Shown here: piece after piece, positions 21,079-29,336 of the stretch
Layout: each line of letters starts with the position of its first letter
How positions within the stretch are numbered: position 1 is the stretch's first letter
Assembly: GCF_006345805.1 (NCBI RefSeq)
Contig: NC_043010.1
Span: 48,856,001 to 48,920,000, forward strand
Length of the DNA: 64,000 nucleotides
Source of the DNA: Octopus sinensis
Taxonomy: Eukaryota
Direction of reading: 5' to 3'
The notes under the pieces: model-generated
What the model saw: the letters and a program-made list of their open reading frames with translations, nothing else
Database searches by the model: none
What the model was told of the DNA's origin: nothing
Translations under genes and position numbers: made by a program

Positions 21079-21111
21079 AAAGAGGTCTTGATGATTACAG
21101 AATATCAGATG
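21079..21111 (+). CDS. 33-nt phase 1-1 exon: (K/E/Q)RGLDDYRISD, 137 nt upstream of exon A
   Basis: Acceptor catcttttgtag, donor ATG|gtaaag. Open and phase-compatible with exon A. Confidence 0.55.
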
Positions 21112-21248
21112 GTAAAGAAACGGTTCTGATTTTGTTTTGTCTATATTTTTCGACAGTTTATTTTAAATGCTTAAAACTCCATCAAACTACAAACCTTTTT
21201 GTTTTTAATTTGTTTTTTAATATGTATTGTCTGTATTTGTTTTCTCAG

Positions 21249-21368
21249 ATAACCTTGTTTTGACAAACGGATATGTAACTGATTCGGACCATTTATCGCC
21301 CAACGCAGCGCTGTTGGCAAAGGCACTGTGCACCAAAGATGGAGAAATTGATGTCAAATGTTACAGAG
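21249..21368 (+). CDS. Internal coding exon A (120 nt, phase 1-1) of an unidentified gene: (D)NLVLTNGYVTDSDHLSPNAALLAKALCTKDGEIDVKCYR
   Basis: Acceptor tatttgttttctcag, donor GAG|gtaaaa. Only the phase-1 frame is open. Paralogous to 29220-29336 with 11 synonymous codon differences. Confidence 0.85.
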
Positions 21369-22876
21369 GTAAAACGTTTTGATCTTATTTTCATTTATTT
21401 CTAATTTAATACTCATATTATTCCATTGTTTGGCAGAATCGTTTGGGCATCGTTCAAAATGTCTTGCTTTATTTTTTTTTCCGCTTCTTGGTTTTTTAAA
21501 AAATTCGAATCCCGCTAAGGTAAATTTTGCCTGTCGTCTTTCTGAGTTCGATAAAATAAAGGTCCCGCAGGTAACGATTTAATCATCTATACCCTTTCAA
21601 ATTTCCAGCCTTATAGAAACATTCTATGATAGAAACATTCTATTATCCTTCCCTCACATTTTTGTAGTGATTAATTAAAGTCTCCAAACTATGCAGTCAA
21701 ATATAAATTCCAATTTGATGTCTAAGCAACATCAGGTATACCTTTTCCCTTGGACGTGTGTTTAAATACCTGACTGGATTCGAACTTTTGTATTTCTGTA
21801 CAAAGGGTAATAATGTCCTAATGCGCTTTGTACAAGAGTCACAGACTTAACTATGACTCTTTGTTTGGAAATGAATGTTTCTAGTTCTCATTCATTCTGG
21901 TATTCTATAATAACCAAGAATAAATCATCTGTTGGTGATCGAAGACCAAAGTGATTGAAAAATAATATAACTCATGATTATTGGGAATGGAAGATGAAGC
22001 AACCTGACGTTTCGACACTAACACTTCGTCTGAGAGAGAAATGAAAACTTTTCAGCAGTTGGAAAGCTCAGTCTTGGAACATTAGGTTCCATTCACCCAT
22101 AGCACACTGATTTATTCAAACCCGTGAACATCATTAGTTAATTTTCGCCAACACAAACTGGCACCAGTTTTCCTAGACTTAAGTGAAAAGTATTGTAGAT
22201 CTGTGAAGGCGCGCGGCTAGTGTATAGAGTGTTGGCCTCATGGTCATTAGTCAGTAGGTTCGATTCTTGGACTGGGCAATACAAAGTGTCCTTGAACAGT
22301 GCACTTCGCTTCACGTTGCTCCGATACATTCAGCTAAGGATGACAAACAGTGACTCCAGGGATTATCCTTGTGACGGACAGGCTTTCCGTTCAGCGGGTG
22401 GAAGTCTTCTACTCTTGACTTAAACACCATGAAAATCCAATTAAGTTCCGATCTCATAAGACTGTAGGTCCGACAGGAATAAAAAGGAGAAAAGAGGGTA
22501 TACGTATAGATATTTTAAAGCTTCTAAAATTTAAAAGATGAGGTTAATAATCCAATAAATTATAACTTCATGGCTTTGCAAGAATCGTTAGAGTATCGGA
22601 CCAAATACTTTGCGATATTTACATAGGGCCTTTCTCATTCTGAGTTCAAATTACACCGAATTCAGCATTTCAACATTGTCTTTCCTTCTTCCGAGGTAGA
22701 TTAAATAAAGTATAACGGAGATACTGTTGTTGATTTAATCGACTAACCAATTCCTGCCAAAATTTTGTGACTCTGTATAAAGTTAAGAAATTATTAAATT
22801 CAACTCATCTCAGGCATTTAGACATTTCATTTAGAGGATTCCTTATATATATAATGTCTATATAGGTCACAAAATT

Positions 22877-23165
22877 GTTTGTTCCTTCTCGAGCCATGCC
22901 TGGCTCATAGGGTCGGTTTCCCGGTGTCCTTGGCGTATAGGTTCCCCACCTGGACGGGACGCCGGTCCGTCGCAGGTGAGCTGCAGGAGGAAAGAGTGAG
23001 AGAAAGTTGTGGCGAAAGATTCAGCAGTTCGCCATTACCTTCTGCCGGAGGCGCGTGGAGCTTAGGTGTTTCGCTCATAGACACACACATCGCCCAGTCT
23101 GACATTCGAACCTACGATCCCTCGACCACGAAGTCCGCTGCTCTAACCACTAAGCCATGTGTCTC
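22877..23165 (-). mobile_element. Family C-type SINE with a third tail type
   Basis: C-like head and body joined to a gagccatgcctggctcataggg..ttcccgg tail. Confidence 0.8.
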
Positions 23166-23329
23166 CACAAGTCACAAAATTACGGTACAAATAATTTGAA
23201 TCTATATTAATAATAATCAGCTAATTCTTTGCACGAGCCGCACGTTTTGATGTGAGAGTAAAATAGATTAAATCGAGCTCCTGTGCTTAATTGGGTCGAA
23301 ACGCGGAAGATAAAGTCGAATAAGAGCGA

Positions 23330-23538
23330 TACTCTTTTACTCTCTCTTACTTTTTTCAGTCATTTGACTGTGGCCATGCTGGAGCACCACCTTTAGTCGA
23401 GCAAATCGACCCCAGGACTTATTCTTTGCAGAATTTATTCTATCGATCTATTATTTGCTGAACCGTTAAGTTATGGGGACGTAAACACACCAGCATCGGT
23501 TGTCAGGCGATGTTGGGGGAACAAACACTGACACACAA

Positions 23539-23603
<65 letters not shown>

Positions 23604-23776
23604 CATATATACGGGGGGCTTCTTTCAGTTTCCGTCTACCAAATCCACTCACAAGGCTTTGATCAGCCCGAGGCTATAGTAGAAGACACACTTGCCCAAG
23701 ATGCCACGCAGTGGGACTGAACCTAGAACCATGTGGTTGGTAAGCAAGCTACTTACCACACAGCCACTCCTACGCC
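23330..23776 (-). mobile_element. SINE family A, full length
   Basis: Complete head and tail. Confidence 0.92.
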
Positions 23777-24154
23777 TATAGAATAAAGAGTTAATCTGAA
23801 TCTCAGCTGATTTGCACTCAAAACGTAAAGAAGGCATAATAATGCATCACAAGCTATTTTGTAAATGCTCTATAGATTTTGTTAATCCTGCGTCTTCCTG
23901 GTTATCGACTAAAAAGGAAATAATTTTATTCGTTAGCATGGCTTGCAGCTAAATACATACACACGAATTCACATGCATACATGCGTGTGTGTACATGTGT
24001 GTAGCTTAAAGTATTTGGACTGTATTTAGAAATTCAAAAAGAATGTATCTTTAAAAGCAAGAATCTAGTAAAGTGCTCAATAAACTACGTTCAGAGTGGT
24101 ATAACTTTATAACATTATAACATTATAAATGCAGAATAATAATGATGCAGACTA

Positions 24155-24157
24155 ATA

Positions 24158-26928: not shown

Positions 26929-27179
26929 ATATATATATATATATATATATATCGTTTTTAATTTACCATAGAGTCTCAAGGATCGAAAGTTTCGTGCATA
27001 GCACTTAGAGTGTCAGTCACTTTTGAAATTTTTTGTCATTTAAAAATCAAATATGTATACATAAACATACATTGGGTGTTATTTCAGCTGCTTATTCTTC
27101 TACATATATCAGGTAAATACATCCTTCTGACATGAGTGACCATAGGTCTGCACCTAGGAAGCTTCTTCCCGAGGCACAA

Positions 27180-27440
27180 GTCCGGTCAAGGATTTTTATG
27201 GAAGATTAACCGCCACCCATGCATGCCAGGCTCTCTTCTTCCCTCCACTGATATTATCTAAGGGAAAGGCAAAGGCTGATACAGCTTGGCAGCAGTGACA
27301 TCACAACTCATTTCTGCAGCTGAGTGAACTGGAACAAAGTGAAATAAAGCGTCTTGCTCAAGAACATTATACACAGCCCGGTCCGGGAATCGAACTCAGT
27401 ACCTCATGTTTGTGAGCCCGACACTAACCAGTGAACTAAA
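27180..27440 (-). mobile_element. SINE family D
   Basis: Reverse complement matches the family D head and body. Confidence 0.8.
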
Positions 27441-27564
27441 GCATATGCATACATATATACATGGATATGTGAATCTACATATATATAGGTACATGTACAT
27501 ACATACAAACTCATACTCAGGCACGTTCAAATACATACATACATACTTATATGCATTACATACA

Positions 27565-27607
<43 letters not shown>

Positions 27608-28167
27608 CTTCTGCTCTCTAAAACAATATTGAAGAGTTAACATAAGATTATAATGCTAATGTAGTGCGTCTTAATTGGCCTTTTAATCATTCGCCAGTCT
27701 GTAAGGCTTTGGTGATATATCACTTGGGTATTTAGATGGCATTCTAATGGCGATGCCAACAGAAGCCATTTAGAGATTAACCCAGGCTACATCTGATCCG
27801 ATAATGGGCGAATCCTCCGCCGACGGTCGACAATCGGCGGCAGGGTGAACTGCTACGAATTACACCATCCTAAAATGTGTATTTGTGACCGGGGACCACA
27901 TGTGAACTTGTATTTCTACTGAAACTCTGAACACGAACTCTACACCTCTACAACGAATGACGACTAACGGCTACGGCGTACCCACTATCCAATGTGCATA
28001 CTCTCTTTGTGATGCTTTGTCAAATGTGCAAGCTGGAGTGTTGGGGCCGCAATGAGGAGCATTGCTTTGCCTGCTGGAACGTTTGGGCCGACCGTCGGAA
28101 TGGTCGGCATTCGTGTGGGAGGTAGTGAACTCGTTGGTCGGAGCCGTTGAATGCTGTCGCAAATATA

Positions 28168-28575
28168 GGCGTAGGAGTGGCTGTGTGGTAAGTAGCTTGT
28201 TTACCAACCACATGGTTCCGGGTTCAGTCCCACTGCGTAGCACCTTGGGCAAGTGCCTTCTACTATAGCCTCGGGCCGACCAAAGCCTTGTGAGTGAATT
28301 TGGTAGACGGAAACTGAAAGAAGCCCGTCGTATATATGTATATATATATATAGATGTATGTGTGTGTGTTTGTGTGTCTGTGTTTGCCCCCGTAGCATTG
28401 CTTGACAACCGATGCTGGTGTGTTTATGTCCCCGTCACTTAGCAGTTCGGCAAAAAGAGACCGATGGAATAAGTACTGGGCTTACAAAGAATAAGTCCCG
28501 GGGTCGAGTTGCTCGTTTAAAGGCGGTGCTCCAGCATGGCCGCAGTCAAATGACTGAAACAAGTAAAAGATAAAA
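28168..28575 (+). mobile_element. SINE family A, full length
   Basis: ggcgtaggagtggctgtgtggtaag..ggttccgggttcagtccc (box-B-like)..gactgaaacaagtaaaaga. Confidence 0.92.
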
Positions 28576-28789
28576 GAAGAAGATATGTAGAGAAGGATAG
28601 CTGACGAAAACGAAATAACTAGCGACCTTCTTATTTGTATTGTGAATAAAAACGCGCTTAGAGGAATATTCTTAAGACATAGCATGTAAGGTGAGAAGAA
28701 CAGCCACTTACGTTCAAGGACATTCTGATGGTGATATGATTCGTGGATTTGGGTGATCGTGTAGGTGGCGATAACAATGAAGGCAACTA

Positions 28790-29090
28790 CGGTGACAACA
28801 ACGACGGTGACGACGACGACGACAATACTGATGATGATGCTGATGAGGAGGAGGAGGAGGGAGTTGATGGTTGAGAAGGAGATGGAGGAGGAAAAAAGAC
28901 GTGAAGGAAGATTTCGATGATGGCGATAATGATGATGATGATGACGACGATGATATCGAGTGGAAGAAAAGAAAGATTTTTATGACGATGATGATGATGA
29001 TGATGATAAGGCAGAGAACAAGGAGAAGGAGAAAGCGAAGGAAGAGGAGGGTTTTAATGATGATGATGATGATGAAAAGGAAAAGGAAAA
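28790..29090. repeat. Purine-rich (GAT/GAC/GAG)n low-complexity tract
   Basis: Direct reading. Confidence 0.85.
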
Positions 29091-29219
29091 TGAGTCGATT
29101 TTGCTTTGTTGTTTTGTTTTGTGTTGTTTTGTTGTTTTCTTTTATATGGAAATATTAATTCTTATCAAAAACTTGTGGTGGGTTTTCTCCCCCCATCATA
29201 CCTCTTTTTTTTTTATCAG

Positions 29220-29336
29220 ATAAACTGCTTTTGTCAAATGGATACGCAGCTGATTCAGACGATTTATCACCGAACACACTGCTGGCAAAGGCATTATGCA
29301 CCAAAGACGGTGAAACCGATGACAAATGTTATAGAG
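29220..29336 (+). CDS. Internal coding exon B (117 nt, phase 1-1), paralog of exon A: (D)KLLLSNGYAADSDDLSPNTLLAKALCTKDGETDDKCYR
   Basis: Acceptor ctcttttttttttatcag, donor GAG|gtaaga. In-frame one-codon indel relative to exon A; homology is largely confined to the exon. Confidence 0.85.

What the first reader, a model, noticed from the sequence alone, without database searches (positions are those of the whole stretch)
21079..29336. Hidden gene with twin 39-40 aa two-cysteine exons (tandem module or mutually exclusive pair)
Seen: two exons about 8 kb apart with canonical splice sites, both phase 1-1. They share 30 residues, including LLAKALCTKDGE.D.KCYR. Eleven of the identical residues use different synonymous codons, and the only indel is one whole codon. 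This pattern suggests purifying selection on a real peptide. The supplied ORF track misses this frame. Inference: these are either mutually exclusive alternative exons or a repeated disulfide-loop (C-x9-C) module. I recognise no family, so it may be an uncharacterised cephalopod protein.
Basis: partly seen in the sequence, partly recalled or inferred. Interest (0 to 1): 0.78.

Follow-up and report, generated by a model that had tools for sequence, protein, structure and literature searches.

The report
Twin exons of secreted octopus protein
The two look-alike exons are real and are spliced one after the other, not as alternatives, into the mRNA of an already annotated but unstudied 138-residue secreted protein, found so far only in octopuses and the argonaut; its function is unknown.

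Summary
Exon A (21249-21368) and exon B (29220-29336) have canonical AG/GT sites and the same phase. They share 29 in-exon residues plus the split Asp codon. Eleven identical residues use different synonymous codons, and the only indel is one whole codon. dN/dS between them is 0.12-0.14 with dS about 0.8-0.9. DNA similarity stops about 12 nt outside each exon.

The gene is not hidden. A and B are exons 2 and 3 of LOC115219547 (XP_029645612.1, "uncharacterized protein", Octopus sinensis). Exon 4 lies at 61064-61121. Exons 1 and 5 fall outside the window; the gene spans about 100 kb.

A 905-nt spliced contig (SRR32601320) joins exon 1, A, B, exon 4 and exon 5 exactly at the predicted junctions. 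Gene models from O. vulgaris and Argonauta hians also carry both modules, each in its own phase-1 exon. The tandem-module reading is therefore supported and the mutually exclusive reading is not.

The protein has a signal peptide, two acidic 39-aa C-x9-C modules, and a basic tail with conserved KR sites ending LNDQRxKRFFSDW. No Pfam, PDB or fold match was significant, and no relative was found outside octopods. My best inference is a lineage-restricted secreted protein, possibly a peptide precursor; this is untested. Interest is modest.

The parts
21249..21368 (+). Exon 2 of LOC115219547 (module A, 120 nt; residues D18(part)-R57 of the 138-aa protein)
   Evidence: Canonical AG/GT sites and open frame. 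100% protein match to P0001/XP_029645612.1. Maps to positions 441-567 of the spliced contig L001 at 96.9% nt identity. Conserved as a separate 120-nt exon in Argonauta.
21369..29219 (+). Intron 2 (7,851 nt): SINE-like copies, TA/CA/ATG microsatellites and a perfect 121-nt palindrome
   Evidence: Repeat content. The orthologous intron in Argonauta hians is only 355 nt. No Octopus-Argonauta conservation outside the exons.
29220..29336 (+). Exon 3 of LOC115219547 (module B, 117 nt; residues D58(part)-R96)
   Evidence: Canonical AG/GT sites. 100% match to P0001 residues 58-96. Maps to L001 561-682 at 98.4%. Conserved as a 120-nt exon in Argonauta.
29337..61063 (+). Intron 3 (31,727 nt), rich in transposable-element remnants (mariner/Mos1-like, SINE-like)
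   Evidence: The orthologous Argonauta intron is 16,739 nt.
61064..61121 (+). Exon 4 of LOC115219547 (58 nt; D97(part) ISLPKEWGSVIKRAIQKK G116(part))
   Evidence: Picked up independently by the splice-site and open-frame scan. 100% match to P0001 residues 97-116. Maps to L001 678-737 at 98.3%. Conserved as a 58-nt exon in Argonauta.

Best explanation
Shown:
- The two segments are exons 2 and 3 of a five-exon gene, LOC115219547 of Octopus sinensis.
- They arose by tandem duplication of a phase-1 exon. Both are included, in series, in the one transcript contig seen and in all gene models.
- Exon 1 encodes MKLLTVFGFVCVLIFVQ, which looks like a signal peptide. Each of exons 2 and 3 encodes one ~39-residue module with a C-x9-C pair. 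Exons 4 and 5 encode a basic tail, DISLPKEWGSVIKRAIQKKGLLERILQAKLNDQRSKRFFSDW.
- The five-exon layout, the four cysteines, two KR sites and the C-terminal LNDQRxKRFFSDW are conserved in Argonauta hians.

Inferred:
- The protein enters the secretory pathway.
- Each module folds as helix / short disulfide-closed loop / helix.
- The protein acts outside the cell as a small lineage-restricted secreted factor. My preferred reading is a prohormone-like precursor cleaved at the conserved KR sites to release C-terminal peptides such as FFSDW; I put that part at about 0.35-0.4.
- The two modules stay similar in Octopus because both are under the same constraint, not because of recent gene conversion (dS about 0.8-0.9).
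For: - Exhaustive HMMER search with the A/B profile found P0001 (E = 3e-51, two matched stretches) and P0003 (E = 8e-11, two stretches).
- P0001 reads signal-like peptide, D, A, D, B, D, tail.
- Names and sources are XP_029645612.1 (O. sinensis), CAI9733111.1 (O. vulgaris), a Logan contig, and GAB1604036.1 (Argonauta hians).
- The 905-nt contig L001 joins ...TGTTACAGAG|ATAAACTGC... (A to B) and ...TGTTATAGAG|ATATAAGC... (B to exon 4). It maps to the window as three abutting blocks.
- The gene range in GCA_006345805.1 is 100,550 bp.
- Argonauta has the same five exons and phases.
- dN/dS is 0.12-0.14 for A versus B and 0.33 for the full CDS, Octopus versus Argonauta. The window versus the Logan contig shows 4 synonymous and 1 non-synonymous change.
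- Only the exons are conserved between the two loci.
- The N-terminal segment is strongly hydrophobic (mean Kyte-Doolittle 3.2 over residues 6-16). The modules are acidic (9 K/R, 14 D/E) and the tail is basic (10 K/R, 5 D/E).
- The KR sites and the C-terminus are conserved.
- Two AlphaFold runs give the same helix / hairpin / helix pattern for each module.
Against: - Function is untested. No tissue, peptide or receptor data were available.
- There is no amidation glycine. Only two dibasic sites are conserved. The module boundaries (CYR|D) are not classical convertase sites.
- Residue -1 of the presumed signal-peptide cleavage site is Gln, which is unusual. No dedicated signal-peptide predictor could be run.
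- The structure models have low confidence (pLDDT 62-65), and the disulfide pairing could not be read from them.
- Only one transcript contig was available, so minor isoforms that skip A or B cannot be excluded. Either skip would keep the frame.
Confidence: 0.85

Rival explanations
1. A and B are mutually exclusive alternative exons: each mRNA carries one or the other.
For: They are adjacent homologous exons of nearly equal length and identical phase. Tandem exon duplications are often linked to mutually exclusive choice (abstract of PMC9013439, listed).
Against: The spliced contig L001 carries A followed by B. All four protein records from three annotation efforts carry both. Argonauta keeps both only 355 nt apart. 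Both lengths are multiples of 3, so joint inclusion keeps the frame. Nothing in the sequence forces exclusivity.
Confidence: 0.04
2. Same gene and architecture, but the product is an unprocessed small secreted protein with a defence or structural role. One form of this idea is an antimicrobial-type precursor, in which the acidic twin-module part masks a cationic amphipathic C-terminal helix.
For: Charge is split between acidic modules (net about -5) and a basic tail (net about +5). The tail is predicted helical. The family is lineage-restricted and diverges fairly fast (58% identity, dN/dS 0.33). These traits are common in immune and secreted effector genes (my own general knowledge).
Against: The most conserved stretch is the extreme C-terminus after a KR site, which suggests a specific recognition element rather than a generic cationic helix. 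No activity or expression data exist.
Confidence: 0.25
3. The two C-x9-C motifs form a twin-Cx9C (CHCH-like) helical hairpin with cross-module disulfides, as in mitochondrial intermembrane-space proteins such as Cox17, rather than two separate loops.
For: There are exactly two C-x9-C motifs, each next to predicted helices. The CHCH definition is from my own knowledge.
Against: No Pfam hit to CHCH, Cox17 or Cmc1 families, even at E <= 10 for the modules or E <= 0.1 for the whole protein. The protein has an N-terminal signal-like hydrophobic segment. The inter-cysteine segment contains Asp-Gly and is modelled as a hairpin, not a helix. The motifs are 28 residues apart.
Confidence: 0.05
4. The similarity reflects a repeated or transposable element, or a chance open frame, and not a gene.
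For: The window is very rich in transposable elements and microsatellites.
Against: There are only two copies in the window. Similarity is confined to the exon plus about 12 nt. The excess of synonymous changes is strong. The exons are spliced into a transcript and conserved in Argonauta, whereas the flanks are not.
Confidence: 0.01

Closest known systems
LOC115219547 / XP_029645612.1 (Octopus sinensis), CAI9733111.1 (O. vulgaris), GAB1604036.1 (Argonauta hians)
   Same: This is the same gene. Window exons 2-4 translate to 100% of the corresponding XP_029645612.1 residues. The Argonauta protein is 58% identical, with the same five-exon structure.
   Different: Nothing differs. All records are automatic annotations named uncharacterized or hypothetical, and no paper in the searchable library mentions them.
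Tandemly duplicated exon pairs used as mutually exclusive exons (for example in ion-channel and myosin genes)
   Same: Adjacent homologous exons of the same phase and nearly the same length, produced by tandem exon duplication.
   Different: Here both copies are included in series, so the duplication lengthened the protein by one module instead of creating isoforms.
Invertebrate neuropeptide or prohormone precursors that carry cysteine pairs (for example the molluscan elevenin and luqin precursors; from memory)
   Same: Small size, N-terminal signal-like peptide, conserved dibasic sites, conserved cysteine pairs about 9-10 residues apart, and the most conserved stretch next to a KR site.
   Different: There is no sequence similarity to any known precursor in the databases searched. 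There is no amidation signal. The modules are not flanked by dibasic sites. No peptide evidence exists.
Twin Cx9C / CHCH-domain proteins
   Same: Two C-x9-C motifs in one small protein.
   Different: This protein has a signal-like N-terminus, no Pfam match, wider spacing between the motifs, and a loop with poor helix propensity.
EF-hand pairs (sorcin was the top but non-significant Foldseek hit) and TPR repeats (LapB, E about 0.02 by sequence profile)
   Same: Repeated helix-loop-helix units of about 35-40 residues, with a K-D-G-x-I motif in the loop.
   Different: The loop lacks the Ca-ligand residues at positions 1 and 12 (Leu and Cys). There is no Pfam EF-hand hit. Foldseek E = 1.2-1.5 with TM about 0.3, obtained on low-confidence models.

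Membership tests
Mutually exclusive exon pair | Adjacent homologous exons with the same phase and similar length | tested here: met
   120 and 117 nt, same phase, 76% amino-acid identity.
Mutually exclusive exon pair | Mature transcripts contain exactly one of the two exons | tested here: not met
   Spliced contig L001 and all four protein records contain both exons in series. Only one transcript contig was available, so minor isoforms remain untested.
Tandem exon duplication giving an internal protein repeat | Both copies are present in the same mRNA, and their phase is symmetrical so the frame is kept | tested here: met
Tandem exon duplication giving an internal protein repeat | One-module-per-exon layout is conserved in an orthologue | tested here: met
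   Argonauta hians exons 19583-19702 and 20058-20177 of L002, both 120 nt with AG/GT sites.
Secreted protein or prohormone precursor | N-terminal signal peptide | tested here: inconclusive
   A Lys is followed by a 14-residue hydrophobic core (mean hydropathy 3.2), and the segment ends at the exon 1 boundary. No dedicated predictor was available, and the -1 residue is Gln.
Secreted protein or prohormone precursor | Conserved dibasic cleavage sites flanking conserved peptides | tested here: met
   K109-R110 and K132-R133 are conserved between Octopus and Argonauta. LNDQRxKRFFSDW matches at 12 of 13 positions.
Secreted protein or prohormone precursor | Processed peptides detected, or expression in secretory or neuroendocrine cells | not testable with these tools
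   No expression or peptidome data could be reached, and the sample behind SRR32601320 could not be traced.
Twin Cx9C (CHCH) proteins | Two C-x9-C motifs | tested here: met
   C45-x9-C55 and C84-x9-C94.
Twin Cx9C (CHCH) proteins | Match to CHCH-type family profiles, and no secretory signal | tested here: not met
   No Pfam family matched. The N-terminus is hydrophobic and signal-like.
EF-hand | Canonical 12-residue loop with acidic ligands at positions 1 and 12 | tested here: not met
   The loop reads L-C-T-K-D-G-E-I-D-V-K-C. A regex scan found no canonical loop in the window. No Pfam EF-hand hit. Foldseek hits to sorcin were not significant.
Transposable or repeated element | Multiple dispersed copies, with similarity extending beyond the open frame | tested here: not met
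   Two copies only, with similarity limited to the exon plus or minus 12 nt.

The most novel reading that the evidence does not exclude
The gene encodes the precursor of a previously undescribed signalling peptide system restricted to octopods, acting as a neuropeptide, hormone or pheromone. Cleavage at the conserved KR sites would release a C-terminal peptide such as FFSDW and perhaps the preceding basic helix. The twin disulfide-loop modules would serve as a carrier or as a second bioactive domain.
Probability: 0.3. Interest if true: 0.55.

Novelty: new member of a known kind. Interest (0 to 1): 0.3.

Why it matters
As a sequence feature this is ordinary: a tandem exon duplication that added a second module to a small secreted protein, in a gene that automatic pipelines already annotate.

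What remains open is the protein itself.
- It has no detectable relatives outside Octopus and Argonauta among about 15 billion predicted proteins.
- It has no Pfam family and no structural match.
- It has a conserved cysteine pattern and a strongly conserved C-terminus that follows a dibasic site.
- It is spread over about 100 kb of repeat-rich DNA.

Lineage-restricted secreted peptides are candidates for cephalopod-specific signalling or defence, so it is a reasonable but low-priority target for expression mapping and peptidomics.

The locus also gives a clean example of intron growth by repeats. The A-B intron is 355 nt in Argonauta and 7,851 nt in Octopus.

Tried and rejected
- **Word-indexed search with A+B joined.** It returned nothing, although the database holds the protein. 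This was a false negative of that index for this query. The exhaustive HMMER search found it.
- **Pfam on the modules and on the whole protein.** No family matched.
- **PDB sequence searches.** Only a weak LapB/TPR match (E about 0.02), which I read as helical-repeat composition rather than homology.
- **EF-hand idea.** It came from reading the KDGEI loop. No canonical loop was found. Sorcin was the top hit in both Foldseek runs but at E = 1.2-1.5 and TM about 0.3, on models with pLDDT 62-65. I rejected it as a membership claim and keep it only as a shape resemblance.
- **Searches for exons 1 and 5 in the window.** Both are absent, so they lie outside the window.
- **Search for a third module copy in the window and in the Argonauta locus.** None found.
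- **Candidate 33-nt micro-exon at 21079-21111 (the finding's start coordinate).** Its splice sites are weaker. It is absent from the transcript and not conserved. Rejected.
- **Profile search with the Octopus plus Argonauta alignment.** No further relatives.
- **Hits P0002 (Physella acuta) and P0004 (Hibiscus).** Both are summed weak matches to internal repeats. I do not accept them as homologues.
- **Literature searches for accession numbers, the locus tag, the run accession and FFSDW.** Nothing relevant.

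
Full report
**1. Checking the observation**

Reading the sequence places exon A at window 21249-21368 (120 nt) and exon B at 29220-29336 (117 nt), both on the + strand. Each follows a pyrimidine-rich tract and an AG, and each is followed by GTAA(A/G)A.

Both exons begin with AT, which completes a split codon, and both end with a single G. Their phases are therefore identical and their lengths are multiples of three.

The peptides are:
- A: NLVLTNGYVTDSDHLSPNAALLAKALCTKDGEIDVKCYR
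- B: KLLLSNGYAADSDDLSPNTLLAKALCTKDGETDDKCYR

A codon alignment gives these counts:

| Item | Count |
|---|---|
| Identical residues within the exons | 29 (30 with the shared split Asp codon) |
| Identical residues with different synonymous codons | 11 |
| Replacements | 9 |
| Indels | 1 whole codon |

The selection measures are:
- Nei-Gojobori gives dN = 0.11 and dS = 0.81-0.93, so dN/dS = 0.12-0.14.
- The excess of synonymous change is significant (Fisher p = 3.6e-5).
- Twelve of the 22 nucleotide differences fall at third codon positions.

The match is not a chance one. tblastn of A against the window finds B at E = 1.5e-15, and nothing else scores better than E about 1.

At the DNA level the similarity covers only 21236-21379 versus 29207-29347. 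It falls to background within 30-60 nt of the splice sites.

On a simple splice-site matrix the four sites rank among the best 0.2-2.6% of all AG or GT sites in the window. A scan for strong-site, open-frame intervals returned only 39 candidates on this strand, and A and B were among them.

One coordinate needs correcting. The finding's start, 21079, is not exon A. It is the start of a 33-nt AG...GT interval (21079-21111) of the same phase. This interval later proved not to be part of the gene.

**2. What it is**

The first word-indexed protein search, with A and B joined, found nothing. Neither Pfam nor the PDB sequences matched the modules.

An exhaustive HMMER search with the two-sequence profile against 1.84 billion representative proteins then found two true hits:
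- P0001: 138 aa, E = 3e-51, two matched stretches.
- P0003: 139 aa, E = 8e-11, two matched stretches.

P0001 reads as follows, with | marking the exon boundaries, each of which splits a codon:

MKLLTVFGFVCVLIFVQ | D-[module A] | D-[module B] | D-ISLPKEWGSVIKRAIQKK | G-LLERILQAKLNDQRSKRFFSDW

The protein records are:

| Protein | Accession | Species or source | Name given |
|---|---|---|---|
| P0001 | XP_029645612.1 | Octopus sinensis | uncharacterized protein LOC115219547 |
| P0005 | CAI9733111.1 | O. vulgaris | hypothetical predicted protein |
| P0006 | none (Logan assembly of run SRR32601320) | unknown Octopus | none |
| P0003 | GAB1604036.1 | Argonauta hians | hypothetical protein |

Mapping P0001 back to the window gives 100% matches for exon A, for exon B, and for a third exon at 61064-61121. 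The splice-site scan had already listed that third exon.

The signal-peptide exon and the last exon are not in the window. This fits the annotated gene range of 100,550 bp in GCA_006345805.1.

The window agrees with the O. sinensis protein rather than the O. vulgaris one at residue 95, which is Tyr in the window and Phe in O. vulgaris.

**3. Tandem modules or alternative exons**

The Logan contig L001 is 905 nt long, with its CDS at 391-807. It is a spliced transcript. It reads ...TGTTACAGAG|ATAAACTGC... across the A-B junction and ...TGTTATAGAG|ATATAAGC... across the B-exon 4 junction.

It aligns to the window as three abutting blocks:

| L001 positions | Window positions | Exon | nt identity |
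|---|---|---|---|
| 441-567 | 21247-21373 | A | 96.9% |
| 561-682 | 29218-29339 | B | 98.4% |
| 678-737 | 61062-61121 | 4 | 98.3% |

In the genome these blocks lie 8 kb and 32 kb apart. Only splicing can have joined them, and it did so exactly at the predicted sites.

The 33-nt interval at 21079 is not included in the contig. All four protein records carry both modules.

I fetched the Argonauta hians locus as L002. It has the same five exons with canonical sites and the same phases:

| Exon | L002 coordinates |
|---|---|
| 1 | 3001-3052 |
| 2 (module A) | 19583-19702 |
| 3 (module B) | 20058-20177 |
| 4 | 36917-36974 |
| 5 | 37770-37839 |

There the two module exons are only 355 nt apart.

Between the Octopus window and the Argonauta locus, only the exons and copies of a shared SINE-like repeat are alignable.

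The tandem-module reading is therefore supported. Mutually exclusive splicing is not the pattern seen. With a single transcript contig I cannot exclude rare in-frame skipping of one module.

**4. Evolution of the pair**

Both species have two modules. The A and B copies also share copy-specific features across species: D-x-LVL in A versus DKLLL in B, and GETD-x-KCY in B. I therefore think the duplication most likely predates the Octopus-Argonauta split.

The divergence figures fit that view:

| Comparison | Identical residues | dN | dS |
|---|---|---|---|
| Octopus A vs Octopus B | 29 of 39 | 0.11 | 0.8-0.9 |
| Octopus module vs its Argonauta counterpart | 20 of 39 | 0.37-0.43 | 0.83-1.45 |
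| Full CDS, Octopus vs Argonauta | not computed | 0.31 | 0.95 |

Synonymous divergence between the two Octopus modules is about as large as that between the species. Recent gene conversion therefore does not explain why the Octopus modules look alike.

The simplest reading is that both Octopus modules are held near an ancestral sequence by similar constraint, while the Argonauta copies have drifted. With only two lineages, parallel duplication or old conversion cannot be excluded.

For the whole CDS, dN/dS between Octopus and Argonauta is 0.33. The window versus the Logan contig shows four synonymous changes and one replacement.

**5. What the protein looks like**

- **N-terminus.** A Lys is followed by a 14-residue hydrophobic core, with mean hydropathy 3.2 over residues 6-16. 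This segment ends exactly at the exon 1 boundary. That is the usual layout of a signal-peptide exon followed by phase-1 modules.
- **Modules.** They are acidic (9 K/R against 14 D/E), and each contains C-x9-C.
- **Tail.** It is basic (10 K/R against 5 D/E).
- **Conservation between Octopus and Argonauta.** All four cysteines, KEWGS-x-IKR, and above all the C-terminus LNDQRxKRFFSDW (12 of 13 positions) are conserved. Two dibasic sites, K109-R110 and K132-R133, are also conserved.
- **Structure.** Two AlphaFold runs, on the full protein and on the mature part, agree on each module: a helix (SPNAALLAKAL), a short hairpin across the C-x9-C segment, and a second helix. A helical tail follows. Confidence is low in both runs (pLDDT 65 and 62).
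- **Fold search.** Foldseek against the PDB gave no significant match. The best hit both times was the sorcin EF-hand domain, at E = 1.2-1.5 and TM about 0.3.
- **Sequence profile against PDB.** A profile search gave only a marginal match to the TPR region of LapB (E about 0.02).
- **Pfam.** No family matches the full protein.
- **Other relatives.** Two further homology searches, with the full protein and with the Octopus/Argonauta profile, found no other relatives.

**6. How it most likely works**

Shown: the gene structure, the serial inclusion of both modules, purifying selection, and conservation in a second octopod family.

Inferred: the protein is secreted, each C-x9-C closes a loop between two helices, and the protein acts extracellularly.

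I favour a prohormone-like precursor, at about 0.35-0.4. The reasons are its small size, the signal-like N-terminus, the two conserved dibasic sites, and the fact that the best-conserved stretch directly surrounds the last KR site. That pattern is typical of processed peptides.

Several points count against this reading:
- There is no amidation signal.
- The module boundaries (CYR|D) are not classical convertase sites.
- There is no peptide or tissue evidence.

The main functional rival, at about 0.25, is an unprocessed secreted protein or a defence-type precursor, in which the acidic part neutralises a cationic amphipathic tail.

A twin-Cx9C (CHCH-like) fold with cross-module disulfides is a structural alternative. 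I consider it unlikely because of the signal-like N-terminus, the lack of any family match, and the Asp-Gly-containing loop.

**7. Comparison with what is known, and novelty**

The gene itself is already in public annotation as an uncharacterised protein. No paper in the searchable library mentions it or its accession numbers.

It is not one of the alternatively spliced duplications reviewed in PMC9013439 (abstract seen).

The family appears restricted to octopods (Octopodidae and Argonautidae) in the collections searched. It has no assignable fold or function.

I rate it a new, uncharacterised member of a known kind: a small lineage-restricted secreted protein or putative peptide precursor with an internal exon repeat. 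Interest is modest at 0.3.

Noticed in passing
window 21079-21111 (+): A 33-nt AG...GT interval of the same phase as exons A and B; its start is the finding's start coordinate. If included it would insert ERGLDDYRISD right after the signal-like peptide. Its splice sites are weaker (top 8% and 5%). It is absent from the transcript contig and not conserved in Argonauta.
   Followed up: yes
window 26683-26928: A perfect palindrome: two 121-nt arms that are 100% complementary, separated by 4 nt and flanked by TA microsatellites, inside the A-B intron. It could be a foldback element or an assembly artefact.
   Followed up: partly
window 26306-26506 (+): An open frame with C2H2 zinc-finger-like spacing (CNLCGCFFKTVSYLKSQIRRH) that ends at a GT donor-like site. 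It has no Pfam hit. It is probably a decayed fragment.
   Followed up: partly
window 48973-49947 (+): Remnants of a mariner/Mos1-type transposase. Pfam HTH_48 (E = 3.6e-16) and Transposase_1 (E = 6.8e-14) match the 48973-49835 pieces. Three other stretches have translations that resemble a mariner-type transposase, but these are not confirmed: 19738-20256 (-) gave only weak HTH hits below Pfam's cut-offs, and 5643-5933 (+) and 59920-60333 (+) were not scanned.
   Followed up: partly
window 23441-23780, with further copies at e.g. 3594-3852, 14003-14343, 28164-28465, 33785-34031, 45815-46100, 53368-53654, 58451-58733 and 60467-60711: A SINE-like element of about 340 nt, present in about ten long copies (roughly 250-340 nt) in both orientations, plus shorter fragments. 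A core of about 95 nt is also repeated in the Argonauta hians locus L002. ARAGORN finds no tRNA gene in the window.
   Followed up: partly
intron between exons A and B: window 21369-29219, compared with L002 19703-20057: The orthologous intron is 7,851 nt in Octopus and 355 nt in Argonauta. The Octopus intron is filled with SINE-like copies and microsatellites.
   Followed up: partly
P0002 (XP_059173645.1, Physella acuta, 663 aa): Twelve tandem repeats of FLTNGFTTDTNIISPSPQST resemble the N-terminal half of the module (LTNGYVTDSDHLSPN). The summed E-value is 2.5e-20, but each repeat contributes only a few bits. This is probably a compositional or short-motif match rather than homology.
   Followed up: partly
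tool behaviour, one search compared: The word-indexed protein search with A and B joined (77 aa) returned no hit, although the database holds a protein that contains both peptides verbatim. The exhaustive search and a later full-length query both found it. A negative result from that index with short queries should not be trusted.
   Followed up: yes
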